Origin: Mustelus asterias
Lineage: Eukaryota
DNA length: 64,000 bases
NCBI RefSeq assembly: GCF_964213995.1
Contig: NC_135808.1
Coordinates: 34,658,001 to 34,722,000, forward strand
Direction of reading: 5' to 3'
This document shows positions 16,145 through 62,170 of the stretch, piece after piece. Numbering within the stretch: the stretch's first letter is position 1; each line of letters begins with the position of its first letter. The translations under genes were made by a program, and so were the position numbers. The notes under the pieces were generated by a model. The model searched no databases, was not told the origin of the DNA, and was given only the letters and a program-made list of their open reading frames with translations.

Positions 16145-16460
16145 AGGACAGTAAGGTGGCACAGTGGTTAGTGCTGCTGCCTCACTGGGTTCAATTCCTG
16201 CTTGGGTCACTGTCTGTGTGGAGTTTGCACATTCTCCCCGTGTCTGCGTGGGTTTCCTCCGGGTGCTCCGGTTTCCTCCCACACTCCAAAGATGTGCGGG
16301 ATAGGTGGATTGACTATGCTAAAATTGCCACTTAGTGTCAGGGGGCCTAGCTAGGGTAAATGCATGGGGTTATGGGGATATGGCCTGGGTGGGACTGTGG
16401 TTGGTGCAGACTCGATGGGCCGAATGGCCTCCTTCTGCACTGTTGGATTCTATGATTCTG
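16145..16460 (+). mobile_element. HE1-like V-SINE directly upstream of the class II promoter
   Basis: tRNA-like head, V core, CR1-derived tail ending ATTCTATGATTCT. Confidence 0.85.
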
Positions 16461-16524: not shown

Positions 16525-16568
16525 CCTGGCAACAGATGATGATAACTCCTATCCCCTTCTGATTGGTC
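16525..16568 (+). promoter_or_regulatory. MHC class II X box / Y box module (RFX and NF-Y sites)
   Basis: CCTGGCAACAGATG (13/14 to HLA-DRA X1 CCTAGCAACAGATG), a 20-bp spacer, then CTGATTGGTC (Y box); same spacing as HLA-DRA. Confidence 0.85.
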
Positions 16569-16903
16569 CCTTACTGACAGAGACAGAGTCTCGGTCTCAG
16601 TTTTGATTGGTCTGTTGGATCCAGGAGCGGAACCATTCTCTACTCTGATTGGTCCATATCAAACCGGGACCGGGTAACCACTCATACCCGCCTCTGATTG
16701 GATTGTTCTGTCCGCCATCCCGCCTGTGATTGGCTACCTGTTCCCAGCTCTGATTGGCTCCTCTGTCTCCCTGCCCGTGCTCTTGTTGCTGATTGGTCCC
16801 TGCTCCCTGGATGTATGGGTTTGATTGGGTGATTTCCCTGCTCCTTATTGGTCAGTGTGTTGCTATGTGATTGGTCAGTCTTCCTGCTCCGTTGTGATTG
16901 GTC
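16559..16903 (+). promoter_or_regulatory. Array of 11 same-orientation inverted CCAAT (Y-like) boxes
   Basis: ATTGG at 16562, 16606, 16648, 16697, 16729, 16753, 16792, 16824, 16847, 16870 and 16897; ten are in the context TGATTGG. Confidence 0.85.
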
Positions 16904-16972: not shown

Positions 16973-17075
16973 ATGTGTCTGTTCACAGCGACTGGCTCCC
17001 GCTCCCTGTGGATCCGGATCTCCCTCCTCATCTTGAGCCTGCTCATCTTCAATGGAGAGAGAGAGAGCGGAGCCG
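16973..17075 (+). CDS. mhc2b: MHC class II beta exon 1 (signal peptide [34 protein letters not shown])
   Basis: ATG just downstream of the X/Y-box promoter; hydrophobic core; donor CCG|GTAAG at 17076; phase 1 joins exon 2 in frame (G+GG = Gly). Confidence 0.9.
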
Positions 17076-20000
17076 GTAAGGACCCAGTTAGAGAGCGGGG
17101 AGGAGGGGGTCCGGAGCCGGTAAGGACCCAGTTAGAGAGCGGGGAGGAGGGGGTCCGGAGCCGGTAAGGACCCAGTTAGAGAGCGGGGCGGAGGGGGTCC
17201 GGAGCCGGTAAGAACCCAGTTAGAGAGCGGGGAGGAGGGGGTCCGGAGCCGGTAAGAACCCAGTTAGAGAGCGGGGAGGAGGGGGTCCGGAGCCGGTAAG
17301 GACCCAGTTAGAGAGCGGGGCGGAGGGGGTCCGGAGCCGGTAAGAACCCAGTTAGAGAGCGGGGCGGAGGGGGTCCGGAGCCGGTAAGAACCCAGTTAGA
17401 GAGCGGGGAGGAATAAAATAAGTGCCTTTCTCTTTAGATTTAAGTGTGCGATATGACTGGGAAGTTTGTAAATAAAACCGATCAGCCGCGTAGTGAAGAA
17501 TCAGTTTTACAGCACAGAAAGAGGTCCTTCGGCCCATCATGTCTGTCCCGGCCATCAAACACCAATCCACACATCTCAATATCCTGCACTTGTTCCTAGC
17601 TCTGGTCTTTCAATTGATCATCTAAATGCTGAGGTTCCCGTCTCCATCCTTTCAGTCGGTGAGTTCCAGATTCTCACCACCGGCTGGGTGGAAATGTTTT
17701 TTCTTCAAACAATGGTTCTATGTTCTAATGGTTAGCACTGCTGCCTCACAGCACCAGGGACCCAGGTTCAATTCTGGCCTTGAGTGACTGTGGAGTTTGC
17801 ATGCTTTCCCTGTGTGGGTTTTCTCTAGTTTCCTTCCACACTCCAAAGGTGTGTGGGTTTAGGTGGATTGGCCTTGATAAATTGCTCCTTGGGTGTAGCT
17901 TGGGGGGATTAGTAGGATAAATGTGTGGGATTGCATTGATGGGGTGGACCTGGGCAAGATGCTCTGTTGGAAAGTTGGTGCAGACTTGATGGCTCAAATG
18001 GCCTCCATCTGCATTGTAGTGATTCTATGAAATCTCCTCAATTCCCTGCCCCTTGCATCTATGCCTCCTGGTTATTGATCCCTCTAAGGGGGTGGGGGGT
18101 TAAATCTTATCTTTGCCCTTAACTTTCACTGAGGTCCCCCTAAGCCTTCTGTGCACTAAGGAAGACAATTTGAGCCTAACCAGCCCTTTATAGCTGGAAT
18201 GCTCCAGCCCAGGCAACATCCTGGTGAATCTCTGCTGTTTAGAGAATGTCAATAGTTTGAGTGGACAAGTATCTGGGGAGGGCAAATGGAGCAAGAGAAT
18301 AATCAATAACTGGGAAGATGTTGAGGAAATGAGACAAGATGCCAAGACAGGTGGACTGGTGTGAAGAAAGCATATGGAATTGGCCATGCTGGAGTTTTGT
18401 CCCCTTCTGGTCACCATGTTACAGGAAGGACATTAATGCTCTGGAGTGCAGAGGAGACTTATTGGAATTTGCCAGGGCTTGAATTTAAGCTGAGATTAGA
18501 TAGGCTGGGGTCATTTTCCTTAGCACAGGAGGTTGAGGGGTCTAGGCAGGATAGATAGACTTGTTTTCCTCCTATCTGAGGGGTCATTATCAGGAGCATA
18601 AATTAAAAGATGATTGGTAGTGATCATGAGGATTTCTTATGACTAATTATCAGCTGCTTCACAGCTCCAGGGACCTGGGTTTGATTCCTGTCTTGGGTCA
18701 CTGTCTGTGGAGTTTGCACATTCTCCTCGTGTCTGTGTGGGTTTCCTCCAGGTGCTCTGGTTTCCTCCCACAGTCCAAAGATGTGTGGGTTAGGTTGATT
18801 GGCCATGCTAAAAATTGCCCTTAGCGTCTTTATGTGTAGGTTAGAGGGATTAGTGGGTGGATATGGGGGTAGGGCCTGGGTGGGATTGTGGTCGGTGCAG
18901 ACTCGATGGGCTGAATGGCCTCTTTTGGTACTGTAGGCTTTCTATGATTTCTATGATTAATAGGGTGTCTGGAATTCACTGCCTAAATTGGTGGCTGAGA
19001 CTAACACTAAACTCATTTAAAAGGAACCTGGATCTGCATCTGAGGTACTGTAACCTGCAAGGCTATAGATGGATGTTGGAAGGTGGGATTAAAATGAATG
19101 ACTTGTTTTTTTACTTAACTGGTGTAGATAATGGGCTGAATGGCCCAGGCTAGAGCTTTATTTTGTTTGGGTACAGTGAGTGAGTGGAAAGGTTTTCACT
19201 CATTTCCAGCCAGTAAACTGAGGCTGCAGATTATTATATTTATGCAGCCTGGTGTTGGTGCTAGTTATTATCAGATATCATGATGCATGAGAATTGATCA
19301 CATCTCTCTGGACAAACTGCTACAGATGTTTGAAATACTACTCTGGACCTAAAAAGAGGGCAGCATCTGTGGAGTGGATGGTGTTTGGTCAATTTCTACA
19401 TGTTTAAAGTAGTGATAAAGGAATGGGATCAAGAGGTCAGAATGAAAATGAAGATCTGATCAGTTGAAAGGCAGAAGAAATTAGTGTGCAAGGAGGTAAT
19501 GAGGCAAGTGAAACAACAGTAAGAGCTCTGAATGAGAATGCAGAACCCCTCTTCACACACATGTCTCTATCTGCTTCAAGAAGATGACCATTATCCCAGT
19601 ACCCAAGAAAAGCCAAGCAGTGTGCCTTAATGACTCAGTGGCTCTGACATCCATGAAGTTCTTCAACAGGTTAGTCATGGCAAGAATCAATTCAAGCCTC
19701 ATGGATTGCCTGGATCCACTAAAGTTCACCTACCTCCACAACAGGCACCATCTCCCTGGCCCTGCACTCAACACCAATGGCAGACTCATATTTATTGACT
19801 ACATCTCAGCCTTCAACACCACTATTCTGATGAAGCTCAGCTCCTCCCTCTGACTGGATCCTGAGCTTCCTAATGCACAGACCCAATCAGTAAGGATGGG
19901 CAATAACACCACCTCCTCCATCCTCAACACTGGTGCTCCACAAGGCTGTGTTCTTGCTCCTTATACTCCTGATACACCTATGACTGGCCAAATTACTCGA

Positions 20001-23000
20001 CTTGATTTTCAAGTTTGCTGATAGCACAGTAGTGGGTCAGATCTCAAACAATGACAAGACTGAGTACAGGAATGAGAATCTGGTGACCGGGTGCAGCAAC
20101 AATCTCTCCCTCTGTCACCAAAATGAAGGAGATTGTTATTGACTTCAGGAAGCAGTGGAGAAGATGCCCCTGTCTACATCAATGGGGACAAAGCAGAAAT
20201 GGTCAAGAGCTTAATGTTTTTAGGTGTCCAGATCACCAACAATCTGTCCTGGTCCCTCCATACCAAAGCTATAGTTACAAAAGCCTACCAATACCTTTAC
20301 TTTTGCAGAAGACTAAGGAAATTTGGCATGTCAGCTAGTACTTGACTTTTACAGATACAACCAGAAAGAATGCTTTCTATGGCTACTGCTCTACACAAGA
20401 CAAACTAAAGGATTGTGAACAAAACCCAATCCATCACTCAAACCAGCCTCCCATCCATTGTCTCTGTCTACACTTCCTGATGCCTTGGGAAGGCAGCTAG
20501 CATAATTAAGGATGACATTCTTCCACTTGTTGGAAAAAGATACAAAAGTCTGACTCAAGAACAGCTTCTTCCCTGCTGCTGTCAGACTTTTGAATGGACT
20601 TGCCTTGCATTAAGTTAATCTTTCTCTACACCCTAGCTATGACCAACACTATCTGCTCTCCTCTTTTATGTCTAGTATGCTTTGTGTATATAGTGCAAGG
20701 AACATACTTTTTGCCAAACTAATACATGTGACAATAAATCATTAGTAGTCATGATCTGTTTTTGAACTCTATGGCAAGCTGAAATGCTGTTCCTCCAGCT
20801 TCACCACTCAGACCTTTGTCCTCCAACTCCTAAACTTGATGTGTTGTTGAAAGTCTGCATTTTGTATGCACACAAATTAAAGTACCTGTGTGCTTGTGAT
20901 TTATTCCCCTTTGTTTTTCCATTATACTCCTGATTACTTACCCATATTCTGTAGTGGCTGCAACAGTTGAATATTGCACTCCAGGAAATGGGCCACCCCA
21001 GCTTTTTACACATTACTGTGATTACTTTGGCATCACTGAACTTGCTCTGTTCTAAGTCCAAGGTAAGAAGTCCAACAGGTTTATTTGGTAGCAAAAGCCA
21101 CTAGCTTTCGGAACAGGCTGTCCCTTCATCAGGTGGGTGGGAGTGAGAACTGATGAAGGGACAGCCTGTTACAAAAGCTCGTGGCTTTTGCTACCAAATA
21201 AACCTGTTGGACTTTAATCTGGTGGTGTTAGAATTCTTGCTGTTTGCCACAGTCCAATGTTGGCATCTCCACATCATGACTCTGTCCAAGGGACAGACTT
21301 TAACATATCAGCTGCCAAGACAAACATCAGCTGTTCTGGGGAATCATTGACTCTGTGCAAGACACTTTGATCTGCCTGAAATTTGGTTCCTGATCAAGTA
21401 TTGCTGCTATTTAGCATATTCCAAGGCTCAGGACTACATGCTGAGGGAGGCACTAAAGCTTGGGGTAGCTGATCCCCAAGGTCCAGTGGGGAATGGCCAG
21501 AAGCTGGTAACTGGGTAAAACCATGCAGATTGTGCTTAATCCTAACCATACATAACTAAATTGAAGTGCCTTGAGTGCAACATGACTAATATAGTTTGAG
21601 CAGTATTCTACTGTGTAGTACCTCAAGTGTGTATCTTGATCTATGGAGGAAATGTGAATGTCATTACACTTTAGAAAGACATTTCCAATTGTAACAATAT
21701 TCATGAAATCTGAAAGAAACAACATGTATTGCAAAAATCTGCTGCAGAATTGGTTTGACCATCATTGCTATTGGGGACCCTGATATAGGGCTGAGGACAA
21801 AAACCTACATTACCAACTGTCTTTCATTCTTTGTCCTTGCAATAGATTCAAAGTCAGTTGGGAGCATTGATTGTCCTGTTTATCACCACCCCATTCTTTC
21901 TGTGCACTGGTCCTGAATCCCTCCCCTGATCTCTGGATCTCATGGATAAAATGTACTCCCTTGACCCCATTTCCCTTCAACTGCTGATCACCTAACCTCT
22001 CATCCTAGCTCCCTAATGTTAGATGACATTGTATTCACTTTTCAACCATTCCTTGTCCTCAAAATGCCCTCCACTCTAGTCATTAACCCTTCCATCACCA
22101 ACCTCCCCTTCCCCTCGTCATTGCACATGTTGAGTCCCGAACTCGTGCTCACCTTGTTTAAATCTAACCTTCCCAGCACACAGCAAATAACAGCTGAGGT
22201 CCCCTACTGACCTGTCGGCAGCTTTTGACCAGTTCACCACGCCCTCGAGGAAAGCCAATATGTTCATCTGGGGTTATGGCGACTATCTTTCACTGACCAC
22301 CCCATCCTTTAACACTCTGCTGTCATCACTGGGACTGTCCTCCACTCAGTTTCTCTTTCAGCCTATGGGAAATCGTAGCTTAAACATCTGTCATGGCTGA
22401 TTTAGTGTTTCATCGTCACCTTGAGTTCCACATGTCCAGGCAGTGCTGTGGCTGGGGTAGGGGAGTGACCCCACAGCTGTCCTGACCCTCTCTACACAGG
22501 GTCAGGGTGTGATCTACTGGAGATTACTGTCACAATGTGGGGTTTCCCGGAGGGGAGTGGGTCTGGGACCCGCACCCCTTCCCCATGTTGTTGTGATGGG
22601 GCTGGGCGGGCAGGAGGTGGAAAGATTCCCCATTCCTGGGTGGCTCTGGTCACTGGGCTGTCTGTCGGGCAGTAACTCGGTCTCTCTCTCTCACAGGGGC
22701 TCATGTCGGGAACTTCATTCACGGATGTGAGTTTAACGACACCGGGGTCTGGACCTATATTGAGCAGTATGTCTATGACCAAGAGCTGCTCGCGTATTTC
22801 GACTTTAACCCGAGGAAGTACATCGCGGTGAAGGACGGGATGGAAAGGACTGTGAAGACATGGAATAAAGAGTTAGCGGAAGCGACCTACCAGCAAGCGC
22901 TCACCATATGTCACACCAACATTGACATCGACGAAAGTGAGGTGCTGCCCCGGAGAGGTGAGAGCCCCGGGGGGGAGGGGGTTAAATGCCATCAGCGGCC

Positions 23001-26000
23001 TATGCTGGGATCGGCCTGTGCCCGGAGCTGCTGAGTCCCCGGGACACTCGGTGCTTTCTCTGAGGCTGAGCTTCCTCCAGCCGCGGGAATCCCGCTCTGG
23101 GGAAAGTCACCGCGCCTCCGCACACTCCCTCCACACACTCCCTCCCTTAACCCACCTGTACACTGGAGACAGAATAGCAGCAATACTCTCCTTCGTTTGA
23201 GGGTGTTAAAGTGTATGTAGTCAGTGAGGTTAAACAGCACCAGCAGTCTGAGTTACTTCCCAGTATCTCCATCCACAGGGACCTGTCCTGCTTCTGGAAG
23301 CTGGCCTCAGACTTCAACTTGACTTGTCACTGGATTTTATTCTAGATGTGGAGATGCCGGCGTTGGACTGGGGTAAACACAGTAAGAAGTCTCAACACCA
23401 GGTTAAAGTCCAACAGGTTTATTTCGGAGCCTCAAGCTCCTTCAGGTGAGTGAGGGCTTGTGTTCACAAACTGGGAATATGTGGGTTAGGTTGATTGGCC
23501 AGGTTAAAAAAATTGCCCCTTAGAGTCCTGGGATGCGTAGGTTAGAGGGATTAGCGGGTAAAATATGTTGGGGTAGGGCCTGGGTGGGATTGTGGTCAGT
23601 GCAGACTCGATGGGCCGAATGGCCTCCTTCTGCACTGTAGGGTTTCTATGATTCTATAATAAAGACAAACTCCATTTACAAGATAATGGTTGGAATGTGA
23701 GTCTTTACAGGTAATCAAGTCTTAAAGGTACAGATAATGAGTGGAGAGGGTTAAGCACAGATTAGAGATGTGTATTGTCTCCAGCCAAGACAGTTAGTGA
23801 GATTTTGCAAGTCATGGGGGTTACAGATAGTGACATGAACCCAAGATCCTGGTTGAAGCTGTCTTCGTGTGTGTGGAACTTGGCTATAGTTTCTGCTCAG
23901 CGATTCTCTGGTGTTGTGAACCACAGGAACAGGAAGAGAACACTCCTGCCTCATGATACGCTGCAGGAAAGGATGTCCTGAGGCATGGTACATTAGGGAG
24001 ACCATGCAGACACTACAACAAATGAATGAACACTGCTCGACAATCTCAATTCCCCTGTGGGGGAACACTTCAGCAGTCACAGGCATTCAACCTCTGATCT
24101 TCGGGTAAGCATTCTCCAAGGCAGCCTTCACCAATACATGACAACGCAGAGTCACTGAGCAGAAACTGATAGCCAAGTTCCGCACATGAGGATGTCCTCA
24201 ACCGGGATCTTGGGTTAATGTCACACTATCTGTAACCCCCACGACTTGCCTGGGCTTGCAAAATCTCACTAACTGTCTTGGCTGGAGACAATACACATCT
24301 CTTTAACCTGTGCTTAACCCTCTCTCCACTCCTTATCTGTACCTTTAAGACTTGATTACCTAGAAAGAGACACATTCCAACCATTAGTTTGTAAATTGAG
24401 TTTGTCTTTATGCCCTGTTTGTGAACAGAACTCCCACTCACCTGAAGGAGCTTGAGGCTCTGAAAGCTAGTGCTATGAAATAAACCTGTTGGACTTTAAC
24501 CTGGCGTTGTGAGACTTCTTACTATTCTAGTCATTGTGCTCACATTATTTAGTTTTTTTTCGCTCATTGTTCATTTCTCTGCATCCTTAATTTTTAATTT
24601 CCCCTTTTTAATCCCATACCGTACAGGGCAGTTTTACTGAATATCCATTTGTATAGATGTGTTCTGTGTTCCTGCTCTTTAAACTTCTTTCCCAGTGCAC
24701 TCTGAGGAAGGGGAAAAAGGTTTCAGTGTTCCATTGGAGCAATTCTTTTTCTTTGTAGCAGTAAGTTATATGGAGGGGATGGAAGTGAAGGCAGTGCAAT
24801 GTACCTCCTGCAGAATGTTTGAGGTGAGGGACACCGTCAGTGTCCCTGCTGATTACACCTGTGGGAGGTGCACCCACCTGCAGCTCCTCCAAGACCACGT
24901 TAAGGAGCTTGAGTTGGATGAGCTTGGGGTCATCAGGGAGGCAGAGGGCCATAGACACAAGCTTCAGGGATATAGTTGCTCCAGGGAATGAAAATAGATG
25001 GGTAACAGAGGGGCTGGGAGGAAGCAGTCAGTGCAGGGATCCCCTGTGGTCATTCCCCTTAGCAACAAGTATTCCACTTTGGATACAGGTGAGGTGACCT
25101 ACCAGTGGTAAGCCGCAGTGACCAGATTGCCAGCGCTGAGTCTGTCCCTGTGGCTCAGAAGTGCAAGGGGGAGAGCGGTAGAGCTATAGTTATTGGGGAC
25201 TTGCTTGTTAGAGTGATAGGAGGTTCTGTGGCAACAAGAGAGACTCACGGATGTTTTGTTGCCTCCCGGATGCCAGGGTCTGTGACATCTCCAACCATGT
25301 CTTCAGGATTCTGAAGGGGGAGGGGGAACAGTCAAGTCATGGTGCACGTCGGCACCAAAGACATAGGTAAGAGAGGGGATGGGGATTTAAAACAGGAATT
25401 CAGGGAGCTAGGGTGGAAGCTGAGAGCCAGGACAAAACAGGTTGTCGTCTCTGGTATGTTGCCGATAGCAAGTTGAGGAACAGGGAGAGTGCAGTTAAAC
25501 GCAGGGATGGTGTAGGAGGGAGGGTTTCGGCATGTGGATAATTGGAACACATTCTGGGGAAGGTGGGACCTAAACCAACAGGACGGGTTGCACCTGAACC
25601 AGAGGGGCACCAATATCCTGGGAGGGAAATTTGCTACAGCTCTTCAGCAGGGGGGGGGGGGGGGGGGGGGGGTTTAAACTAATTTGTCAGGGGGATGGGA
25701 AAAGGAGTTGTAGTCTGGAGGTCAGTGAGTGTAGTGAGGTACTGGGAAGGGTATCATGGTCAAAGGTGGGTACCAGCAGGCAAGAAGGTGGGTTGAAGTG
25801 TCTACTTCAATGCAAGGAGCATCTGAAATAAGGTAGGTGAACTTGGGGTGTGGATTGGCACTTGGGACTACAATGTTGTGGCCATTACGGAGACATGGGT
25901 AGAACAAGGACCGGAATGGTTGTTGCAAGTTCCGGGGTATAGATGTTTCAGCAAGTGTAGGGTAGCTGGTAAGAGGTGGAGTGGCACTGTTAATCAAGGA

Positions 26001-29000
26001 GAGTGTAATGGCTGCAGAAAGGCATTTCGAAGGCGATCTGCCTACAGGGGTAATATGGGCTGAGGTTAGGAATAGGAAAGGAGCGGGCACATTGTTAGGA
26101 GTTTACTATAGACCCCCAAATCTTAGAAATATTAGAAACCCTACAGTGCAGAAAGAGGCCATTTGGCCCATCATGTCTGCACTGACCACAATCTCACCCA
26201 GGCCCTACCCCCAGATCCCTACATATTTACACCCTAATCCCTCTAATCTACACATCCCAGGACACTAGGGGGCAATTTTAGCATGGCCAATCAACCTAAC
26301 CTGCACATCTTTGGACTGTGGGAGGAAACCAGAGCACCCAGAGGAAACCCACACACACAAGGAGAATGTGCAAACTCCACAGTGACCCCAAGCCAGGAAT
26401 CAAACCCAGGTCCCTGGAGCTGTGAAGCAGCAGTGCTAACCACTGTGCTACCTTGCTGCCCTAATAGAGATGTGGAGCAAGAAATTGCTAAGCAGATTAT
26501 GAATAGGTGTGGAGGTCACAGGGTAGTTGTCATGGGGGACTTTAACTTTCCAAATATTGATTGGAACCTTTGTAGGTCAAATAGTTCGGATGGGGCAGTT
26601 TTTGAGCATTGTGTGCAGGAGGGGTTCCTGACACTATGTGGATAAGCCGACAAGAGGTGGGGCCACATTGGATTTGGTAATGGGAAATGAACCGGGCCAA
26701 GTGTTGGATTTGGTTGTGGGAGAGCACTTTGGAGATAGTGACCACAATTCTGTGTCTTTTGTTATTGTGAGGGAGAGGGCCATGCGGCAGGACATAGTTT
26801 ACAATTGGGGGAGAGGTAATTATGATGCAATCAGGTGGGAATTGGGAAGCATAGGATGGGAACAAAAATTGTCAGGGAAAGACACTAATGAAAAGTGGAA
26901 CTTTTTCAAGGAACAAATACTGCGTGTCCTTGATGGGTATGTCCCTGCCAGGCAGAGGGGAAATGGCCAAGTGAGGGAACCATGGTTCACAAGAGGTGGA
27001 ATGTCTTGTCAAGAGGAAGAAGGAAGTGTATGTAAGGTTGAGAAAACAAGGTTCAGTTGGCTCAATGAAGGGTTACAAGTTAGCAAGAAATGAGCTGAAA
27101 AAGGGGCTTAGGAGAGCTAGGAGGGGGCATGAGAAGTCCTTGGCGGGTCGGATCAAGGAAAACCCCAAGGCTTTTTACTCTTGTGTGAGGAATAAAAGAA
27201 TGACCAGGGTGAGGTTGGGGCTGGTCAAGGACGGCAGTGGGAATTTGTGCATGGAGTCAGATAGGAGAGGTGATGAATGAATACTTTTATTCGGTGTTCA
27301 CCAAGGAGAGGGGCCATGTTTTTGAGGAAGAGGGTGTCACAGGCTGATAGGCTGGAGGAAGTAGATGTTCGGAGGGAAGATGTACTAGCAATTTTGAATA
27401 AACTGAAAGTTGATAAGTCCCCTGGGCCTGATGAAATATATCCTAGGAGCCTTTGGGAGGCAAGGGATGAGATAGCGGAGCCTTTGGCATTGATCTTTGC
27501 GTCCTCACTGTCCACAGGGGTGGTGCCAGAGGACTGGAGAGTGGCGAATGTGGTTCCTCTGATTAAGAAAGGGAATAGAAATGACCCTGGTAATTGGAGG
27601 CCTGTTAGTCTTACTTCGGTGGTCAGTAAGTTGATGGAAAAGGTCCTCTGGGATAGGATTTATGACCTTTAGAAAGATGCAGCTTAATCTGGGATAATCA
27701 GCACGGATTTGTGAAGGGCAAGTCTTGCCTCACAAATTTGATAGAATTTTTTGAGGAGGTAATGAAGTGTAGATGAAGGTAGTGCAGTTGATGACATATA
27801 CATGGATTTTAGTAAGGCATTTGATAAGGTCCCCCATGGTCGGCTTATGAAGAAAGTAAGGATGTGTGGGGTAGAAGGAAGTTTGGCCGATTGGATAGGT
27901 AACTGGCTATCTAACAGAAGACAGGGTGGTGGTGGATGGAACATTTTCGGACTGGAAACCAGTTACCAGCGGAGTGCCACAGAGATCGGTCCTTGGTCTT
28001 CTGCTATTTGTCATTTTTATAAATGACTTGGAGGGGGCTGAAGGGTGGATCAGTAAATTTGCTGATGACACCAAGATTGGTGGAGTAGTGGATGAGGTGG
28101 AGGGCTGTTGTAGGCTGCAAAGAGACATAGATAGGATGCAAAGCTGGGCTGAAAAATGGCAAATGGAGTTTAACCCTGATAAATGTGAGGTGATTCATTC
28201 TGGTAGGACAAATTTAAATGTGGATTACAGGGTCAAAGGTAGGGTTCTGAAGAATGTGGAGGAACAGATCTTGGGGTTCATATCCATAGATCTCTGAAGG
28301 TTGCCACTCAAGTGGATAGAGCCATGAAGAAGGCTTAGTGTGTTGGCATTCATTAACAGGGGGTTTGAGTTTAAGAGCCGTGGGGTTATGCTGCAACTGT
28401 ACAGGACCTTGGTGAGACCACATTTGGAATATTGTGTGCAGTTCTGGTCACCTCTCTATAAGAAGGATGTGGAGACACTGGAAAGAGTGCAGAGGAGATT
28501 TACCAGGATGCTGCCTGGTTTGGAGGGTAGGTCTTGTGAGGAAAGGTTGAGGAAACTTGGGCTTTTCTCTTTGGAGCAGAGGCGGTTGAGAGGAGACTTG
28601 ATAGAGGTTCATAAGATGATGAGGGGGATAGATAGTGAATGTTCAAAGACTATTTCCTTGGGTGAATGGAGCAGTAACTAGGGGGCATAACTATAGGTTT
28701 CATGGTGGGAGATATAGGAAGGATGTCCGAGGTAGGTTTTTTACTCAGTGGTTGGGGTGTGGAATGGACTGCCTGCAGGGATAGTGGAGTCAGGAACTTT
28801 AGGAACATTTAAGAAGCTATTGGATAGGCACATGGAGTACTTCGGGATGATGGGGAGGAAATAGCTTGATCTGGGTTTCAGACAAAGCTTGGCACAACAA
28901 CATGGGCTGAAGGGCCTGTTCTGTGCTGTACTGGTCTATGTCTATGTCGATTATAGTGAACGTTCAAAGACTATTTCCTTGGGTGGATGGAGCTATTACA

Positions 29001-35000: not shown

Positions 35001-38000
35001 GGCACAATGTAGAGAGACCACATTGGGAGAACCAAATACTGTCACTAAATTGTAGAAGGTGCAAGTGAAATGTTGCTTAACCTGAAGTGTTTGGGTCCAT
35101 GTGCACTGAGGCAAAAGGGCAGGTGTTTCACCTTCTGCAATTACATGGGATGGGGAGTTGTGGGTGATGTCAGAACAATCCCTGTGGAATGCTGATCAGG
35201 AGGACAGTGGGAAGAAATACTTTGTAGTGGCATGTTGGAGTTGGCAGAGAATGATCCTTTGAATGTGGAGACTGGTGGGGTGGATGAGGGGGCCCTATCA
35301 TCCTTCTGGGAGGAGGGGAGAGGTGCAGGAAATGGGTCAAACCCAGTTGAGTGCCCTGTCAACTACAGGTAGGGGAGGATTATCAGTTAAGGTAAAAAGC
35401 AGATGTCAGAAGTGCCATTTTCAAAGGTGGCATCATCAGAGTAGATGTGGTGGAGGTGGTCCACATAAACAAAAGGACAGGCATAATAGGGGCTCATGCA
35501 AGTACATCTTTGCCAGACCTGAGTTTTTTCAGTGTTTTTGCTTATTTTTTTATGCTTGTTTTATGGTGTTACCTATGCCTGTCTTTGGCAAATAGAGCTC
35601 TTTTAGGGAGTATACACTGATTTTATCAACTTTTTTGAACACTTCTCCAGAACTGTTCCTTTTTTACCCATTTAATATTCTTGCCCAGTTTATTATGTCT
35701 CTAATTGAAGTTCGTCTTGCCTAAATCTAGGATCTTGGTCACTGTTTCATATTTTTCCCCTTCAAACATTGAACTTGATCAGATAAATATACCATCAGGC
35801 TATCATTACATTTGACATTTTACTGAAGGGCATGATGAGCTAGTGCCCGGCCACTCTGATATTTTGTGATGCAGCCAGCCAGTTACTTGAATATCAAAAA
35901 TTACCCCTTGGTTCCTGCTTCAGGTGTCACCATTTCCAGTTTACATGAGATTCTTAATCAAGTTTGAGCCATTTGGCATGATGACAAATGGACCAATCGC
36001 AAAAAGTTGCCAGAAACCACGACCAATAGGAGGCCTGGTATCTCATTTCACTACTTCCATTCGTCTTACTGAAGCCACCACTTGGTAAAGGTGTTTCCAC
36101 TCTTCAGGGCAACACTCTTCTCTGTGGATCTGTGTTCCAATTCCACAACTTGCCAATCTTGCCTGATTCGAAGGCCAGAACATGTAGAAAAGGACTTGAG
36201 TGAAGGTCTTCCAAAACTCTCCACAAATAGTAACAAGGCTCAAGGAAAATCAGACACTTGCTGCCATTATACTATGTTCTTTATTTCTAAATTGACTCTT
36301 CTGTTTCTATTCCAGTCAAACCAACAGTCACTGTCCGACCTAAAACAATGCCACATTCTGGAAAGTCAGCCCTGCTCTTGTGTCATGTTACTGGATTTTA
36401 CCCTCCTGAGATTGAGGTCACATGGCTGAAAAATGGAGTGCCGGTTCCCGATGGTGTCATCAACACTGCCCTGTTATCAGATGGTGACTGGACCTATCAG
36501 GTGCAGGATCTCCTCCAGTATCAGCCTGTGTCTGGGGATAAATATACCTGTCATGTGGAACACAGCAGCCTGAATGAACCCAAGAAAACAGACTGGGGTA
36601 AGAACATAATGTATGGAGTACAACTTGAAATAAAGCAAAATTCTGGAAACACTGAGCAGGTGTCAGAATCTGTGGGGAGAGAAATAGTTTACATTTCGGG
36701 CTAATCTGTCAGTTCTAGCAGTTATTGCTGCAAGCAGTGAACAAAAGGCAGCCCCAGAACAGATCCTGAGAGGAACCACTACCTAGCATCACTTTGTAAT
36801 AAATTGGCTATGCCTTGCTGTAAATTTCCTCCAGTGAGGAGCCTTGTCAAGGGTTCTCTGGTCTGTCCATTTTTACCCTAACCTTTGGGTTTCTCTACCT
36901 GTTCAATTTTGGTGTGCTTCTAATCACTTAGTCTTTTCATTCTATTGTACCATCTTTCCAAAATCTGTCACTTTTTTTACTATTCTTGTTCTGGAATGAC
37001 CATTATTGGACTCGAGGTGCTAACCAGACTTTACTCATCATTAGCTCTAGCAGTCTCCTTTTATAGATGTCACATGTTGTAGAAGGAATCCTACATATTA
37101 GAAATTGAACTTCCTTGTCACTGATATAACAAATCTAGCTTTCCTGCTTTATTCACAATAGATTACCACTTATCCTGCTTTGTCACTGCACACCTTTGTA
37201 CTATAAATTCCTCCAACTGAACTGCCCTCAAAAGCCTTTTATCCCTAAAACCTTCTAAACACATCATGCCACCATTTTAATACAATTTTTGTTAGTTTAA
37301 GAAGTTTACAAGGAAGATCTTAAGCTGTTTCTCTTTTATTGGTCCCTACTTACCTCTGTCTTCCCTTACTGGGAATTTTTTTACTTCTCCCCAGCTTTTG
37401 CCTCCATTTTTGTACAAGTGCACAGGGACTTTTGTCTTCAACTTCGTGGTCGGCATCTCCAATTCCCAAAGAACCTGGGATCTCCTGTGCATGTGTCAGC
37501 CAGGCAAGGGCTACACAAGGTACTCTGTTTAATGTTGGTAATCCAAACTGCATGTGCCTGCTGGAAAAGTCACATGCATGCTTCTGATTTTTTACATCAG
37601 TTAGGCTACACGCATGGTTTTGGGCCTATTCCCAGCCAGTGCATGTGTGGGAGGCTCAAGGTTCAGCAGGATTTGGAGATGCCAACCACAGCTGAAAACT
37701 AATTGGATTTATTTCATTTACATTAATGTTAATTTTTAATCATTGGTGTGCTGTGAAGGCCCCACAATGTGCTGCTGCACACCAGTTGGAACCTTTAAGC
37801 TTCCTCCTAAACTCCTTTCACATAAGTTGATCATTCCAGAGCTTGATAGTCATGTGACTACCCTCCAGCTCTGTTTGAGAATGCTGTCAAGTTCAATAGA
37901 ACACCCTGTGCTGCTCTAACACCTGGATTGTTTCTCATGTACAGAAGTGGGAAGCACAACTGAATCAGAGAAACACAAGATCATTGTTGGAGCTGTGGGA

Positions 38001-41000
38001 TTTGGAATTGGGCTGATCATCCTGCTGGCTGGAGTGATTATGAAGCTGAGGAATGCTAAAGGTAAGATTCTGTTCAGTGAGCACAAAACCCCTACCCTCA
38101 GGATGTGACTCTGGGTAGTCTGATTTCATAGAAGGCTCTACAAAAGAAAGATCAGGATGATGGCTGGGAACATCCAAATATTTTAAGCCTTCCTGGCTTC
38201 CAACCTAAAGTTGACATGTTAACCTTGCTTGTGGTAACAATCCTTGTATTGGGAGTCAGCTAGTTTGAGTCTTGGTGCAATGTGAGGGAAGAAACTAATC
38301 AAAACCGGAGCAATTTCACTGGGAAACTTTTATTGAAGGCAACACCACAGGCAGGAAATTCCTTCCCTCTGAACAAATTTCTTACTAAAGTAGTTGGTGG
38401 AATCATTGGATATTTCCAAATTGTCCTTCTGGAGCTGAATATGTAATAGTAACAGCGGTTAATGCAGTGCTGATTTTTCCACAATTATAAAAGGTGGCTT
38501 GAGTTAACCTGCTATCAAAGCACAGGAACAGGCCCTTCAGCCCACCAAATCCATGCTGACAGATGCCTGATCTAATTTTTTTGCCTGTGGTCCATAATCC
38601 CTCTATTCCCTGCCTCTTCACATATGTATCCAGTTACCTCTGTAATGTTTAGCTACATCCCATAGTAGCTTGTCAAACCCAATGAACAAGGCCTCACTTT
38701 AAAAAAAAATTGGTGTAACAAATCAAAACATTATATTGGCAATTTAAAGTGATTTTTTTTAAAATTTGAGGTGTAATTTGCCTGTTAATGTTTTGGGTTT
38801 AATTGTTATGGCTGTAGAAAATTGTGGAAGACTACAAGCTCTTGCTCCCACCCCTCACAATAAATGTCATCAAGAGTAGATGGAACTATTCCCACTGAAA
38901 GGATCAAGAACTAAAGGTCACAAGTGCACACTCTGCACTATAGGCACATGTATTCTATACATTTAAAATTAAGTTGAGCTACATTAAATTGCAATGTAAC
39001 CAGATATTTATTTTAAATATTGTAGACAAGTGTTACAGGTTCTGTCAGTATCTCGGTGAAATGAGGGATTGAGAACAGACAACCAAACAAGTTCAAAGCT
39101 GATAATGTGCAGGGGAAGTGAGACCCTGAATTCCATATAGCATTGTGTTGTGGGTTTGTCTGTGGTTGGCGGGGGGGGAATGTTGCTGACATGTGAATTT
39201 GACTATGCTGAACACCACTAGAACTGAAACTTTGGCTTTCAGGCACTGAGTTAGCAATGCAGCGAGCGAAGCTGTGACTGTCTGAAGGGACATTGGGCTT
39301 GAGTGAAGTAATTGTCCACATCAGGGCTGTGGAACTTGAGACCTGTTTCCAGAATCTTAAAGTGCAGAAGGAGGTCATTCAGCCCATTGTGTCTGCATTG
39401 GCACTCTGAACAATTCACTTCTCCTGCCTTCTTTATCGTCATATTACAGCACAGAGGCCCTTTGGCCCACATGACGCACTGGCCATCAAGTACCAGTCTA
39501 TTTTATAGTTCCTTTTGAATACTTTGATTAAACCTGTTTTCACAACTCCATGCATTCTAGACCATAACCAATTAATGCATGATTTTTTTCTCTTCGCTTT
39601 TGCTGCTTTTTGTCAATTACTTTAAACTTGTGACCTTTAGTTCTTGATCCTTTCAGTGGGAATAGTTCCATCTACTCTTGATGACATTTATTGTGAGGGG
39701 TGGGAGCAAGTGCTTGTAGTCTTCCACAATTTTCTACAGCCATAACAATTAAACCTAAAACATTAACAGGCAAATCACACAAATTTTTAAAAATCACTAA
39801 ATTGCCAATATAATGTTTTGGTTTGTTATTGCTAAATTGAGACCTTTGTTGGTTGTTTGACAAGCTACTATGGGATCTAGCTAAACATTGCAGAGGCCAC
39901 TGGATAGATACATGAATAGGCAGGGAATAGAGGGCTATAGACCGTGCAGAGGCAAGAAAATATTAGAGGCATCTGTCAGCACAGACTTGGGGGGGCTGAA
40001 GGGCCTGTTCCTATGCTGTACTGTTCTTTGATAGCAGGTTAACTCCAACAATCTTTTATTATGGTGGAAAATTCAGCACTGCTCAATTTATCTGGCTGAC
40101 CTCATCCTGGTCAATGCTCCTCAGACAAGTTTTCATATATTATCTGGATAACACTTGCTCCAAGTTTGATCCAAATCTGAACTTGTAGTCTTTCACAACC
40201 ACTGTCTCAAAACATTTACAGTCGATGAAATCTATTGTAATGTAGGAAACCGGACAAAATTTATAAACCACAAACTCCCAGATGGGCAATGCTATAGAAC
40301 CATAACATTGTAGCACAGAAACAGGCCTTTTGGCCCTTGGCAGTGCTGAACCATTTTTCTGCCTAGTCCCACTGAACTGCACCTGGACCATATCCCTCCA
40401 CACCCCTCATCCATGTACCTGTCCAAGTTTTTCTTAAATGTTAAGTGAGCCCGCATTCACCACTTCATCTGGCAGCTTATTCCACACCCACCACTCTGTA
40501 GAAGCCCCCCTAATATTCCCTTAAACTTTTCCCCCTTCACCCTTAACCCATGTCCACTAGTTGTTTTTCTCCCCTAGCCTCAATGGGAAAAGCCTACTTG
40601 CATTCAGTCTACCTATACCCATAATTTTATACACCTCTATCAAATCTACACTCCAGAGAATAAAGTCTGAACCTATTCAACCTTTCTCTGTAACTCAGTC
40701 TCAAGACCCAGCAACATCCTTGTCAACCTTCTCTGCACTCTTTCAACCTTATTAATATCCTTCCTGTAATTGGGTGACCAAAACTGCACACAATACTCTA
40801 AATTCGGCCTCACCAATGTCTTATACAACCTCACCATAACATTCCAACTCCTATACTCATTTATAAAGGCCAATGTACCAAAAGCACTCTTTACAACCCT
40901 ATCTACCTGTGACACTTTTAGGGAATTATGTATCTGTATTCCCAGATCCCTCTGTTCTACTGCACTCTTCAGTGTCCTACCATTTACCTTGTATGTTCTA

Positions 41001-44000: not shown

Positions 44001-47000
44001 TCCAAACCAGGAATGACTGTCCTGCTTGTCACCATTGTGTATTAACCTCTGATCAAGTCTGAGAATAAGATGTAAACCCACAACCTTCTGACTTGGTGAA
44101 CTAACCATGTTTGTTGTTTTCTTTCAGCCATCCTGGATTCCAGCAATCACGGCCCACGTAAGTATTTCAGCAAATAACTATTTCAAATCTGTTGTGGATT
44201 TCTATCACTGCATTGACAGCTAGAATTACCCAGCTCAGATACAGCAGTTTGGACAGAGTAAAGCTTCCTCTGCACTGATTAGGAATTGGATTCAGAATGT
44301 CCCAAACTCCAGTGTTGGTGAAAGCCAGTTTTTATCAAGATTTATGGGGTTCACTTGTTTACAATAACCCCACCAATCATAAATCGGATCAGGTTCTAGA
44401 GACATAACCACATGACAAGAACACTTTAAATGGTGAATTCAGGAAGTTTATTCACTTAAAAATAAGTCCGAATTTAAAAAGCAAAGTATCAGAAGAGAAA
44501 GCTCTAACAATTGAATAAACTTCTCTCCATCCTTAGAGCAAGTAATATATTGACAACATTGAAAACAGCTCTCAGCACCTCAAATATTGTCTTCCCATCT
44601 CCTTCTGTCTGCCCCCTCTTCCTGTCCCTCTCCCCATGTGGGAGCAAACCCACACACTGGGAGAACATGCAAACTCCACAAACAGTGGCCCAAACTGGGA
44701 ATCAAACCCAGGTCCCTGGTGCTGAGGCAGCAGTGCTAACCACTATGCCACCCCACTGTATGAAAGACCATGCCTCTCTCGGTAGGCTGAGGGAGTATAG
44801 CTCAGTGGTAAAGCAATTTGACTATGTGGAATAGTGACAGTGGTTAGACTGGTGCCTCTCGGCACCAGGGAGCCAGGTTTGATTCTGGCCTTGGGTGTCT
44901 GTCTTGTAGCACTTGCACATTCTCTCCATGGGTTTCCTCTAGTGCAAAAATGTGCAGGTTGGTGGATTGACCATGCTACGTTGCCCCTTAGTGTGGGATA
45001 GGGCAGGGGGTGGGCCTGGATAAGGTGCTGAGTTGGTGCAGATTTGATGGGTTGAATGGCCCCCTTCTGCACAGTGGGGATTCTGTCATGGCCAATAAGT
45101 GATTTACTTGGCTGTCATTGGGAGTTGAGGTCCTGCAGACCTATTCAGCCACCCTCTTAGTCAAGGTTAACACATTGTTGCTTTTGTCTGTTGCCTGAGC
45201 ATTTTCAGACTAATTAATAAAACATTTGTGTTCCAAATAACATTTCCAGGCTTTCTAACTTGAATTACTTTGTGTCGCAATTAAGTTATCTACTTGACTT
45301 ATCTAGCTGGTTTCCAATAATGGTTTGTTTTTATTAATGGCTTCCATCAATTTTAGCAGAAAATGCTGAAGAACCTAGTGATTCAAACTGCAAAATGATC
45401 ACACTGAAACTACCAACAGTCCCCAGGTTGAGGGTGAAATATTGTCAATTTATTGATCCCTCGCTATCCAATTCACCCTTGTGGGTTTCACTTGGGCCTC
45501 AGAATTTATTTCTAGTCCAAATCCATTGAATTTGTAGCCTCCTGTGAAGACAAATAACAGGATGAACAGAACAACAATTGTGGTCATTTGTATGAGCACA
45601 AAGATGGTGGAAATGGGTCTTAACCAGGCTGTTCACTTGCATTAAAAACAGTTGCCATGTTGTTGCATAGTTATATAACATCTGTGAAATTGCCAAATTC
45701 GTCTAGTCAGTCTCTTGGGATGCTGGCATTGGTCCTGGGGCTTCCATCCCTGTTGGCTAGATGTTAATTCTTGGAAAAGGCAGGATGTGAAGAGTCAGGA
45801 CATCTGTAAATAAAGTGCAGTAGTTACTCTTTAGTTAATTGACTAATACTGTCCCATTTATTTTCTCTGCTTTCTCTTTTGCCTTTCATGGTGGCAACAT
45901 GTTTGCCCACATTGGGGTAATCTGTACACTACTTTGTTCCCTTTCTCCACCACTTCAGAAGATTATGGATGGTGAGGTAAAGCTTGTGTGATTCCAAGGA
46001 ATTTTTGCAATTAAGTGAAAATGTTTCTGGGGTGAAATGTGACCCTCGGCACTATCAATCTGTAGTAATTGTCCCCACCTACAGATTACCTCAATCAATA
46101 CCCAGTCCTCCTTAAAGCTGCAACCAATTTCATACTCCACATTACTTCCTAACCTTCCATCCCAATTCAAAATTCATTGAACTTTAATGTTCATCTAGCA
46201 GTATTGATACTTCAGTTGCGAGCAATTAAAGAACTAACTTCACAAAGTGAACCAAAGATAAAGATTTAATAAAGAAACTTCATTGCACCAACACAGGCCA
46301 CACAAAGCTCCCCACAATTCCCACCTGCTTTCTTTATATACTGGATCAGCTGGTCCCTCAATGTAACTAATAGTTACATGTTAACACTTTGACTCCGAGC
46401 AGTATCTTTGTTTTAAAGTCAGCTTCTCTATGAAGTAGGTGTCAATGCCTCTAATTTAAGGATGTTTCATGCTGGTTGAAGTAGTTATACATGACTGAGA
46501 CCTATTTTTAATGTGACTGAATACAAGATCAAGTGTAGTATCAATGTGCTGCACTTGTTTGAAGTCATGAGATTACACTGAGGCTTCATTTGAAGCAATT
46601 TAAAGCAGCATCTTGGCCTTTTGGTTAAGATGCAAATGAGATCAAGCCTTGGAGGTGCTATGCCTGCTCCAATCAGCTTGGATCATGTAGATCAAGCCCA
46701 AGATGGTGAGGCCTGGATTGGGAATGCCTCACTGGCTGAGACTCTGAATTGGACTTTGATTGGATTGAATTGGATATATAAACAAAAAACATTTGCCTGA
46801 ATATCTCCTGATCTTTGAACCAGCTGATTTCCCATATTCTCATTTTGATTTATTGTCAATGTATTAACAAAGTCATTCTTGCACACATGCCATTCATAGG
46901 GAAGGAAATGAGAGAGTGCAGAATGTAGTGTTAGTCATAGCTAGGGTGTAGAGAAAGATCAACTTAATGCAAGGTAAGTTCATTCAAAAGTCTGACAGCA

Positions 47001-60879: not shown

Positions 60880-62170
60880 AAGATAGATCCTTTGGAGAGG
60901 AGCACTGAGTTTCTGCTAAAGATGCTTCATCCATGGTCAAATAGGAAAGAGTGGAGCCAAGTGGGGACAGACCATTGAGCAGATCAGCAGGGAGGTGTTG
61001 GAGAAGGATGGTGTTAGAGCAGGATGGTGTTGGAGCATCAGGATGGTGTTTGGCATAGTTTACTATGCCAAAGGCTGGATTTGAGGAGGGATAGTGCACC
61101 CTGATCGCAATCACAGAGGATGATCTTTATGATGTTGATGTGGACTGTTTCAGTACTGTGGTAGGAGCAGAAATCTGGTTGGGGTGGGGGGGGTGGATTC
61201 AAATAGGCAGTTGAAGAAAAGATGATGATGATTGATTTAGGAAGTGACAACACGTTGAGTGATCGTGGCAAGAAAAAGAGATTTGAGATGGTGCAGTGGT
61301 TTGCAAGGTCAAGAAAAGTTGGGTTTTGTGAAGAGGAGGGTGAATACTGCAGACGTGACGGGGGGTAGAATTATTCACACTTTCAGTTAACATGGAACCA
61401 GGTAAGGAAATTAGATGGTCAGCAGTCAGATGGGAAAGGGGTTGAGTGAACAAGGAATGGGTTTCTCAGACAAGATGAAGTTGGGGAAGAAATTAGATGA
61501 AATAAGAGAGAAACGAGAGAAAGNNNNNNNNNNNNNNNNNNNNNNNNNNNNNNNNNNNNNNNNNNNNNNNNNNNNNNNNNNNNNNNNNNNNNNNNNNNNN
61601 NNNNNNNNNNNNNNNNNNNNNNNNNNNNNNNNNNNNNNNNNNNNNNNNNNNNNNNNNNNNNNNNNNNNNNNNNNNNNNNNNNNNNNNNNNNNNNNNNNNN
61701 NNNNNNNNNNNNNNNNNNNNNNNAAAGATATTCAGTGCCTACCCTTATTCCCCATGTCAATCCTGAAGTGATTAATAGGTCGGGTGTTAAAGAGTGAGGC
61801 CCACAGGAGAGATGGGGTCCAACAACATCTGGTGATGATGGTTAAACCAGTCCTGTACCAGACATGCTCAAATGTGCAGTCTGAAACGTCAATGCACAGA
61901 TATCAGAGCCATACCCAAGTAGGAAGAGAGCAAAGGTTAGACAGATTAACAACGACGGAAATATTGATAGAGGGTGAAAAGTTGAGAGTTGAACCTTATT
62001 CGTGCTGTTGTAAGAGATTCGGGGGAAGCTTTTTTCTTGGGGTAGGTGTAGAAGGCAGTGGGTTGGACAAGATTGTGAAGAATGTAATGAAGTGGTTAGA
62101 GAGTGCATCATCTGTAAGTGTCGAGGTGTCACAGGACAGACAACTTCAAGAGGGTTGTCATGAATATGGA
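60880..62170 (-). mobile_element. Degraded L2-like LINE fragments flanking the gap
   Basis: FCSYHSTETVHINIIKIILCDCDQG, resembling the L2 GFRxxHSTETAL motif. Confidence 0.45.
61524..61723. other. Assembly gap (200 N)
   Basis: Run of N. Confidence 1.

What the first reader, a model, noticed from the sequence alone, without database searches (positions are those of the whole stretch)
17069..17412. Minisatellite that multiplies the exon-1 splice donor eightfold; only the first copy is productive
Seen: the 44-bp unit includes the last 7 nt of exon 1 and the donor (GGAGCCG|GTAAG), giving eight essentially equal 5' splice sites. Donor 2 (+44) and donor 3 (+88) shift the frame and hit TGA inside exon 2. 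Donors 4-8 include the in-frame TAA at 17165. Each unit also has G-runs, potential hnRNP H/F or G-quadruplex sites. Inference: copy number could act as an allele-specific dial on class II beta output through competing donors and NMD. Alternatively, something must silence seven decoy donors that lie closer to the acceptor.
Basis: partly seen in the sequence, partly recalled or inferred. Interest (0 to 1): 0.8.

Follow-up and report, generated by a model that had tools for sequence, protein, structure and literature searches.

The report
Splice-donor-repeating minisatellite in shark MHC gene
A 44-base tandem repeat at the end of the first exon of a shark MHC class II beta gene copies the splice donor eight times, an arrangement already known from several human genes, where normally only the first copy or first few copies are used.

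Summary
Tandem Repeats Finder gives 17068-17412, period 44, 7.8 copies, 97% matches. A 31-nt unit pattern matches 8 times against 0 in 100 shuffles. The first unit holds the last 8 nt of exon 1 plus the donor, so CCG|GTAAG occurs eight times. Only the first donor (exon end 17075) keeps the frame. Donors 2 and 3 reach TGA in exon 2, and donors 4-8 include the TAA at 17165. The gene is an apparently intact class II beta gene with five exons found.

The arrangement is not new in kind. Borensztajn et al. 2006 (PMC1557585; abstract, introduction, one results section and discussion read) describe the same anatomy in human F7 intron 7. They list IFI6 (6-16), CBS, LMNB2 and PDGFA as further cases. Only the upstream-most one to three donors are used there.

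My best reading is an ordinary intronic minisatellite. Donor 1 is used and the decoys are mostly silent, helped by G-runs between the donors. Any leak would carry a premature stop.

The copy-number "dial" idea therefore stays untested, and the precedents mostly argue against it. The scan's notes held no earlier finding of this kind.

The parts
16560..16901 (+). Promoter region with ten co-oriented TGATTGG (Y-box/inverted CCAAT-like) motifs just upstream of exon 1
Evidence: 10 of the window's 30 TGATTGG matches lie at 16560-16901, all on the + strand. groups them into families D2-D5. Function was not tested.
16973..17075 (+). Coding part of exon 1 (leader peptide, 34 codons plus 1 nt, phase 1)
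   Evidence: BLASTP of its translation against the leader of homologue P0002 gives 13/29 identical, E 5e-6, and ends three residues before the junction. My reading of the residues beyond it puts GAG|AH here opposite GVG|AH in P0002.
17068..17412 (+). 44-bp minisatellite, 7.8 units. The first unit spans the exon 1/intron 1 boundary.
   Evidence: TRF; 8 matches, 0 in shuffles; family D1, spacing 44.
17076..17077 (+). GT of donor 1, the only donor that keeps the reading frame. Copies of it lie at 17120, 17164, 17208, 17252, 17296, 17340 and 17384.
   Evidence: frames and stops; identical in-register U1 pairing for all eight.
17165..17167 (+). TAA in the exon 1 frame, inside unit 3. It stops any mRNA made from donors 4-8.
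   Evidence: ORF 16973..17167.
17097..17408 (+). 15 G-runs (GGGG and GGGGG in each unit), lying 22-34 nt downstream of each donor and 7-22 nt upstream of the next
   Evidence: positions; two-tetrad G-quadruplex candidates only.
22697..22957 (+). Exon 2, beta-1 domain
   Evidence: Pfam PF00969 MHC_II_beta 23.2 bits against a cut-off of 20.9. PDB class II beta chains match at E about 5e-4. P0002 aligns at 47.8% identity.
36316..36597 (+). Exon 3, beta-2 Ig C1-set domain
   Evidence: Pfam C1-set 87.6 bits. 72.6% identical to P0002.
37945..38061 (+). Exon 4, connecting piece and transmembrane segment
44128..44157 (+). Exon 5, short cytoplasmic exon ([10 protein letters not shown])

Best explanation
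This is an ordinary, probably young minisatellite at the 5' end of intron 1 of an intact shark MHC class II beta gene. Its first unit happens to include the last 8 nt of exon 1 and the splice donor, so the donor is reiterated eight times.

Productive mRNA is made from the upstream-most donor (17075|17076). The seven downstream copies are functional-looking pseudo-sites that stay largely unused. I infer two reasons.

1. The splicing machinery commits to the first suitable donor it meets in a run of consecutive donors. This is the upstream-first selection shown experimentally for the F7 intron 7 minisatellite. For a first exon, cap-proximal recruitment of U1 (recalled knowledge) would act the same way.

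2. Every decoy is preceded by two G-runs, and donor 1 is followed by them. G-runs enhance a donor upstream of them and silence when they would be exonic.

Any leak through donors 2-8 gives mRNAs with premature stops, which should be cleared by NMD.

Shown here: the anatomy, the frames, the equality of the donors, the intact exons, and a homologue's leader/beta-1 junction at the position of donor 1. Inferred: which donor is used in this animal, the role of the G-runs, and NMD.
For: Array and donors.

The gene looks functional. Five exons are open, with GT donors and AG acceptors and phase 1 junctions. There is a class II beta-1 hit and a C1-set hit.

Homologues P0002 and P0009 (273 aa) lie on contigs of only 1260 and 1332 nt, so they are read from spliced RNA-like contigs. 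Their leader aligns to exon 1, and the leader/beta-1 junction falls at the position of donor 1, with no 44-residue insertion.

Precedent (PMC1557585; abstract, introduction, results section 6 and discussion read). In F7 intron 7 only the most upstream of 5-9 identical donors is used. When sites are inactivated in turn, the next upstream one takes over. LMNB2 and PDGFA use only the authentic site. IFI6 and CBS use the first three.

G-run logic (bioRxiv 10.1101/2024.10.07.617118, passages read). G-runs act as enhancers downstream of a donor and as silencers in the exon. Deleting the four G-runs between the TP53 exon 6 donor and a stronger cryptic donor 63 nt downstream switches splicing to the cryptic site.

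Here the first G-run is at 17097 and there is none in exon 1.
Against: There is no RNA evidence from this genome.

Predicted local RNA accessibility does not favour donor 1. The unpaired probability of GGUAAG is 0.10 for donor 1 against 0.11-0.66 for the others. Structure therefore offers no help.

F7 exon 7 is an internal exon of a mammal, whereas this is a first exon of a shark. IFI6 and CBS show that the next two sites can leak. Here donors 2 and 3 would both be frameshifts.

Classic work on duplicated donors (recalled, and mentioned as contradictory in the discussion of PMC1557585) sometimes found the acceptor-proximal copy preferred.
Confidence: 0.68

Rival explanations
1. The decoy donors compete appreciably with donor 1, so part of the pre-mRNA is spliced into PTC-bearing forms and removed by NMD. 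Alleles with more units would then give less class II beta chain.
For: All eight donors are equal in U1 complementarity. All decoy products carry premature stops. IFI6 and CBS use two pseudo-sites besides the authentic one (PMC1557585 introduction). The title of Lievers 2001 in that paper's reference list links the CBS VNTR to reduced activity (title only).
Against: In the five human cases listed, use never goes beyond the third site although copy numbers run from 5 to 26. Loss should therefore saturate and not scale with copy number. In F7, 50 additional subclones per transfection showed no other splice variant. Nothing was measured here.
Confidence: 0.15
2. A crippled allele or pseudogene. 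The expansion diverted splicing to downstream donors, so this copy makes little or no protein although its exons still look intact.
For: The array is 97% uniform and so probably recent. Decay of the exons would not yet show. An earlier unchecked note reports a class II beta pseudogene 14 kb beyond the window (s1-892548), so gene death occurs in this region.
Against: Five exons are open with canonical splice sites. A rich Y-box promoter lies directly upstream. The precedents favour use of donor 1.
Confidence: 0.07
3. The array is real but its copy number in the assembly is wrong (collapse or expansion of a tandem repeat). 'Eightfold' would then be an assembly figure, not a biological one.
For: Tandem arrays of near-identical units are error-prone in assembly. 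No reads could be laid.
Against: The units carry two variable positions in all four combinations. That is what a real minisatellite looks like. At 344 bp the array is well within a single long read.
Confidence: 0.1

Closest known systems
Human F7 (coagulation factor VII) intron 7 minisatellite (Borensztajn et al. 2006, PMC1557585)
   Same: A minisatellite of a few tens of bp (37 there, 44 here). The first monomer spans the exon-intron boundary (last 4 bp of the exon there, 8 here). There are 5-9 copies there and 8 here. The authentic donor is followed by pseudo-sites of identical sequence, and use of the pseudo-sites would give aberrant mRNA.
   Different: F7 exon 7 is an internal exon and its donor is weak (UGG/gugggu). 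Here it is the first exon with a good donor (CCG/GUAAG), and each unit carries two G-runs. Donor use is shown by experiment for F7 and is not shown here. The F7 authors excluded intronic auxiliary elements for F7, whereas I propose that G-runs contribute here.
Human IFI6 (6-16) exon 2/intron 2 minisatellite, and the CBS 31-bp VNTR at the exon 13/intron 13 border (as summarised in PMC1557585; original papers not read)
   Same: Tandem units reiterate the donor. The authentic site plus the two nearest pseudo-sites are used. For CBS, repeat number was linked to enzyme activity (title only).
   Different: The 12-nt IFI6 unit keeps the frame (recalled), so the extra donors give protein variants. Here no decoy gives an open frame.
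Human LMNB2 (100-bp unit) and PDGFA (81-bp unit) intron minisatellites that reiterate the exon/intron junction (PMC1557585)
   Same: Only the authentic, first donor is used despite 10-18 copies.
   Different: The units are longer. The original papers were not read here.
G-run intronic splicing enhancers between a native donor and a cryptic donor (TP53 intron 6; bioRxiv 10.1101/2024.10.07.617118)
   Same: G-runs lie between an upstream donor and a downstream competitor and are needed for use of the upstream one.
   Different: That is a single-copy arrangement with a weak native donor and a stronger cryptic one. Here the G-run block is repeated with every donor. No experiment was done here.

Membership tests
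Minisatellite whose first monomer spans an exon-intron boundary and reiterates the 5' splice site (F7 IVS7 type) | Head-to-tail array of units of roughly 10-100 bp | tested here: met
   Period 44, 7.8 copies, 97% matches. Spacing is exactly 44 between all 8 pattern matches.
Minisatellite whose first monomer spans an exon-intron boundary and reiterates the 5' splice site (F7 IVS7 type) | The first unit contains the end of the exon and the authentic donor | tested here: met
   Unit 1 starts at 17068 and the exon ends at 17075. The exon end is fixed by the frame into exon 2 and by the homologue's junction (plus my reading).
Minisatellite whose first monomer spans an exon-intron boundary and reiterates the 5' splice site (F7 IVS7 type) | Downstream pseudo-sites identical, or nearly so, to the authentic donor | tested here: met
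   Positions -8 to +5 are identical in all eight. Position +6 is G in four and A in four. In-register U1 pairs are 8 of 11 in all.
Minisatellite whose first monomer spans an exon-intron boundary and reiterates the 5' splice site (F7 IVS7 type) | Only the upstream-most donor or donors are used in vivo | not testable with these tools
There is indirect support only: the leader/beta-1 junction of transcript-like homologues matches donor 1.
Minisatellite whose first monomer spans an exon-intron boundary and reiterates the 5' splice site (F7 IVS7 type) | Copy number polymorphic between alleles | not tested
   Other individuals or haplotypes were not examined. The four combinations of two variable sites suggest exchange within the array.
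MHC class II beta chain gene | Beta-1 domain exon of the class II beta type | tested here: met
   PF00969 scores 23.2 bits against a cut-off of 20.9 (weak, E 8.4e-5). Four PDB class II beta chains match at E 5e-4 to 7e-4. The named homologue P0004 is an 'MHC class II beta chain N-terminal domain-containing protein' of Chiloscyllium punctatum.
MHC class II beta chain gene | Ig C1-set beta-2 exon, then a connecting piece/transmembrane exon, with phase 1 junctions | tested here: met
   C1-set 87.6 bits. Transmembrane exon at 37945-38061. Phases were read.
W-category MHC beta chain (WB; Okamura et al. 2021, PMC8713811) | No tryptophan at position 61 of the beta-2 domain, where class II beta has an invariant W | tested here: not met
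   The beta-2 exon reads ...[10 protein letters not shown].... I take this W to be the class II W61 by its place in the domain. The equivalence is my reading, since no alignment to the paper's figure was possible. The feature itself comes from the legend of Fig. 4.

The most novel reading that the evidence does not exclude
The array is not neutral. Each added unit brings two more G-runs (hnRNP H/F sites or two-tetrad G-quadruplexes) to the first 350 nt of intron 1. Unit number could then tune how efficiently the cap-proximal donor 1 is used, or how well the gene is transcribed. That would give an allele-specific expression setting for an MHC class II beta gene in a shark. The dial would work through enhancer dosage and not through decoy competition.
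Probability: 0.1. Interest if true: 0.5.

Novelty: new member of a known kind. Interest (0 to 1): 0.25.

Why it matters
If the reading holds, this is a non-mammalian and first-exon example of a donor-reiterating minisatellite. The phenomenon has so far been analysed in a handful of human genes. The shark case would be a natural test of whether upstream-first donor choice is general among jawed vertebrates. It would also test whether G-runs within the unit contribute.

For annotation it matters practically. Gene finders faced with eight equal donors can pick the wrong one and call this class II beta gene broken.

It does not by itself change what is known about MHC regulation.

Tried and rejected
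RNA structure as the silencer of the decoys. By eye I saw a possible GGGUCC/GGACCC stem around donors 2-8 that donor 1 lacks. A local-folding calculation (window 150, span 100) did not single out donor 1: the unpaired probability of GGUAAG was 0.10 for donor 1 and 0.11-0.66 for the others. Half of the units carry A at +6, which breaks that stem. I rejected this idea.

A second start codon rescuing a decoy donor. Reading by eye, the only other ATG between the first ATG and the array (17052) runs into TAA at 17121 and has no signal peptide. I rejected this idea.

Canonical G-quadruplex. There is none in 16973-17430, only two-tetrad candidates.

Paralogous exons in the window. A tblastn of the translations of exons 1-3 found only themselves.

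W-category identity. I rejected it on the beta-2 tryptophan.

scan_promoters_terminators uses bacterial consensus patterns and says nothing here.

Prior reports. Searches (listings only; 15 of 285 and 12 of 47 papers listed) showed no title about a donor-spanning minisatellite in an MHC class II gene. Passages of PMC8010645 and PMC9992475 do not mention one. PMC8010645 has 0 occurrences of 'intron'. One search (cap-proximal donor) found 0 papers, so that point rests on recall. Supplements were closed. The supplementary sequence lists of PMC8010645 and Table S1 of PMC8713811 might bear on which class II lineage (DAB or DBB) this gene belongs to. I did not assign one.

Not done. I did not run the spliced protein model as a joined query in any search. 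Exons were searched one by one.

Full report
WHAT IS THERE

The region 17068-17412 is a clean tandem array with period 44, 7.8 copies, 97% matches and no indels. A 31-nt pattern from the unit matches eight times, all without mismatch. The matches are exactly 44 nt apart and lie only here in the 64-kb window. None of 100 shuffles gave a match. Units 1-7 are full length, and unit 8 leaves the unit after 37 nt.

Two positions vary among the units: G/A at unit position 14 and A/C at position 34. All four combinations are present. This fits a real array that has undergone exchange and is young.

THE GENE

The ATG at 16973 opens a 34-codon hydrophobic leader that ends at 17075 in phase 1. The other exons are:
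- Exon 2, 22697-22957. It follows a pyrimidine tract and AG and encodes a beta-1 domain. Pfam MHC_II_beta scores 23.2 bits against a cut-off of 20.9. Four PDB class II beta chains match at E 5e-4 to 7e-4.
- Exon 3, 36316-36597, a C1-set domain (87.6 bits).
- Exon 4, 37945-38061, the connecting piece and transmembrane segment.
- Exon 5, 44128-44157, a short cytoplasmic exon.

All the junctions I read are GT-AG and phase 1. The three larger exons are single copy in the window. A LINE-like reverse-transcriptase ORF cluster sits in intron 2.

A full scan of 1.84 billion representative proteins with the exon 2 translation gave only 8 hits at E up to 0.001. The best are shark proteins. P0003 is from Rhincodon typus. 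P0004 is from Chiloscyllium punctatum and is named an MHC class II beta N-terminal domain protein. P0002 and P0009 are 273-aa full-length chains.

The beta-2 domain keeps the tryptophan of GDWTYQ. I read this as the class II W61 that W-category beta chains lack, so the gene is class II and not W-category. I did not assign it to the DAB or DBB lineage of Almeida et al. 2020 (PMC8010645, passages).

All of them hold.
- Donor 1 gives 103 nt from the ATG, phase 1, and an open frame through exon 2.
- Donor 2 (147 nt, phase 0) stops at TGA 22829.
- Donor 3 (191 nt, phase 2) stops at TGA 22728.
- Donors 4-8 all contain the in-frame TAA at 17165-17167.

The only other ATG before the array (17052) meets a TAA at 17121. 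So only donor 1 can give a class II beta chain.

The eight donors read CCG|GTAAGG or CCG|GTAAGA. Each has 8 of 11 in-register pairs with the U1 5' end, and duplex energies are -8.7 or -8.2 kcal/mol. This is as good as the donors of exons 3-5, which score -9.2, -9.5 and -7.6.

Two small corrections apply. Eight exon nucleotides are shared with the unit, not seven. Exon 2 ends at 22957.

WHICH DONOR IS USED

This could not be measured. The look-up of sequencing runs on exon 2 listed four runs of one study that hold 0.61-0.96 of its words. Their kind is unknown and none is on record as RNA. I also did not look for this gene in contig or read collections.

Indirect evidence comes from P0002 and P0009. 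They sit on contigs of 1260 and 1332 nt, too short for anything but spliced RNA. Their leader aligns to exon 1 with 13 of 29 residues identical at E 5e-6. The residues beyond that alignment, read, put GVG|AH opposite GAG|AH here. The ancestral junction is therefore the one donor 1 makes, and the relatives carry no extra residues there.

IS IT NEW?

No. One search led to Borensztajn et al. 2006 (PMC1557585). I read its abstract, introduction, results section 6 and discussion.

The human F7 gene has a 37-bp minisatellite whose first monomer holds the last 4 bp of exon 7 and the donor, with 5-9 copies. Physiologically only the most upstream site is used. Each pseudo-site is functional, because inactivating sites in turn activates the next one downstream. 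Sites with up to 91% consensus value do not compete. The authors' structure predictions found nothing specific.

The introduction lists four further human cases:
- IFI6 (6-16): 25 pseudo-sites, with the first two used besides the authentic donor.
- CBS: 15-20 repeats, also with two pseudo-sites used.
- LMNB2: only the authentic site is used.
- PDGFA: only the authentic site is used.

MECHANISM PROPOSED

Donor 1 wins because it is first in a run of consecutive donors (shown for F7, inferred here). It is also the cap-proximal donor of a first exon. That point is recalled knowledge, and one search found no paper for it.

The unit adds something F7 is not reported to have. Two G-runs sit 22-34 nt downstream of every donor, which puts them 7-22 nt upstream of the next donor. 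There are 15 runs in all, and exon 1 has none.

G-runs enhance a donor upstream of them and silence when they would be exonic. [quoted passage not shown] By that logic every unit both supports the donors upstream of it and handicaps its own successor. Donor 1 is the only donor with no handicap. This is inference.

Predicted RNA accessibility does not distinguish donor 1. There is no canonical G-quadruplex motif, only seven two-tetrad candidates.

THE DIAL

If decoys leak as in IFI6 and CBS, donors 2 and 3 would give frameshifted mRNAs that should be NMD targets. In the known cases use stops at the third site whatever the copy number, so output should not scale with unit number beyond three.

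The title of Lievers et al. 2001, seen only in a reference list, reports an association of the CBS VNTR with reduced activity. A modest effect therefore cannot be excluded. I give the dial 0.15.

VERDICT

The finding is a new member of a known kind and not a new mechanism. Donor usage, copy-number polymorphism and read support remain unchecked.

Noticed in passing
window 16560-16901: There are ten co-oriented TGATTGG motifs (Y-box/inverted CCAAT-like) in 342 bp directly upstream of exon 1. That is 10 of the 30 matches in the whole window, where shuffles gave a mean of 15.7. Together with the minisatellite, this makes two local tandem amplifications on either side of exon 1.
   Followed up: partly
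window 16407-16443 and 17509-17545: A 37-nt inverted repeat, 81% complementary, brackets the promoter, exon 1 and the array with 1065 nt between the arms. It looks like two copies of a dispersed repeat in opposite orientation.
   Followed up: no
window 22697-22957 (exon 2) and proteins P0001-P0004, P0009: The beta-1 domain scores only 23 bits on Pfam MHC_II_beta. It found just 8 relatives at E up to 0.001 among 1.84 billion representatives. P0002 and P0009 differ from each other mainly in beta-1, as alleles of a classical gene would. The lineage (DAB or DBB) was not assigned.
   Followed up: partly
window 25800-28700: There is a cluster of reverse-transcriptase-like ORFs (LINE-type) on the + strand inside the 13-kb intron 2 of the class II beta gene.
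   Followed up: no
window 61524-61723: A run of 200 N, either an assembly gap or masked. I left it alone.
   Followed up: no
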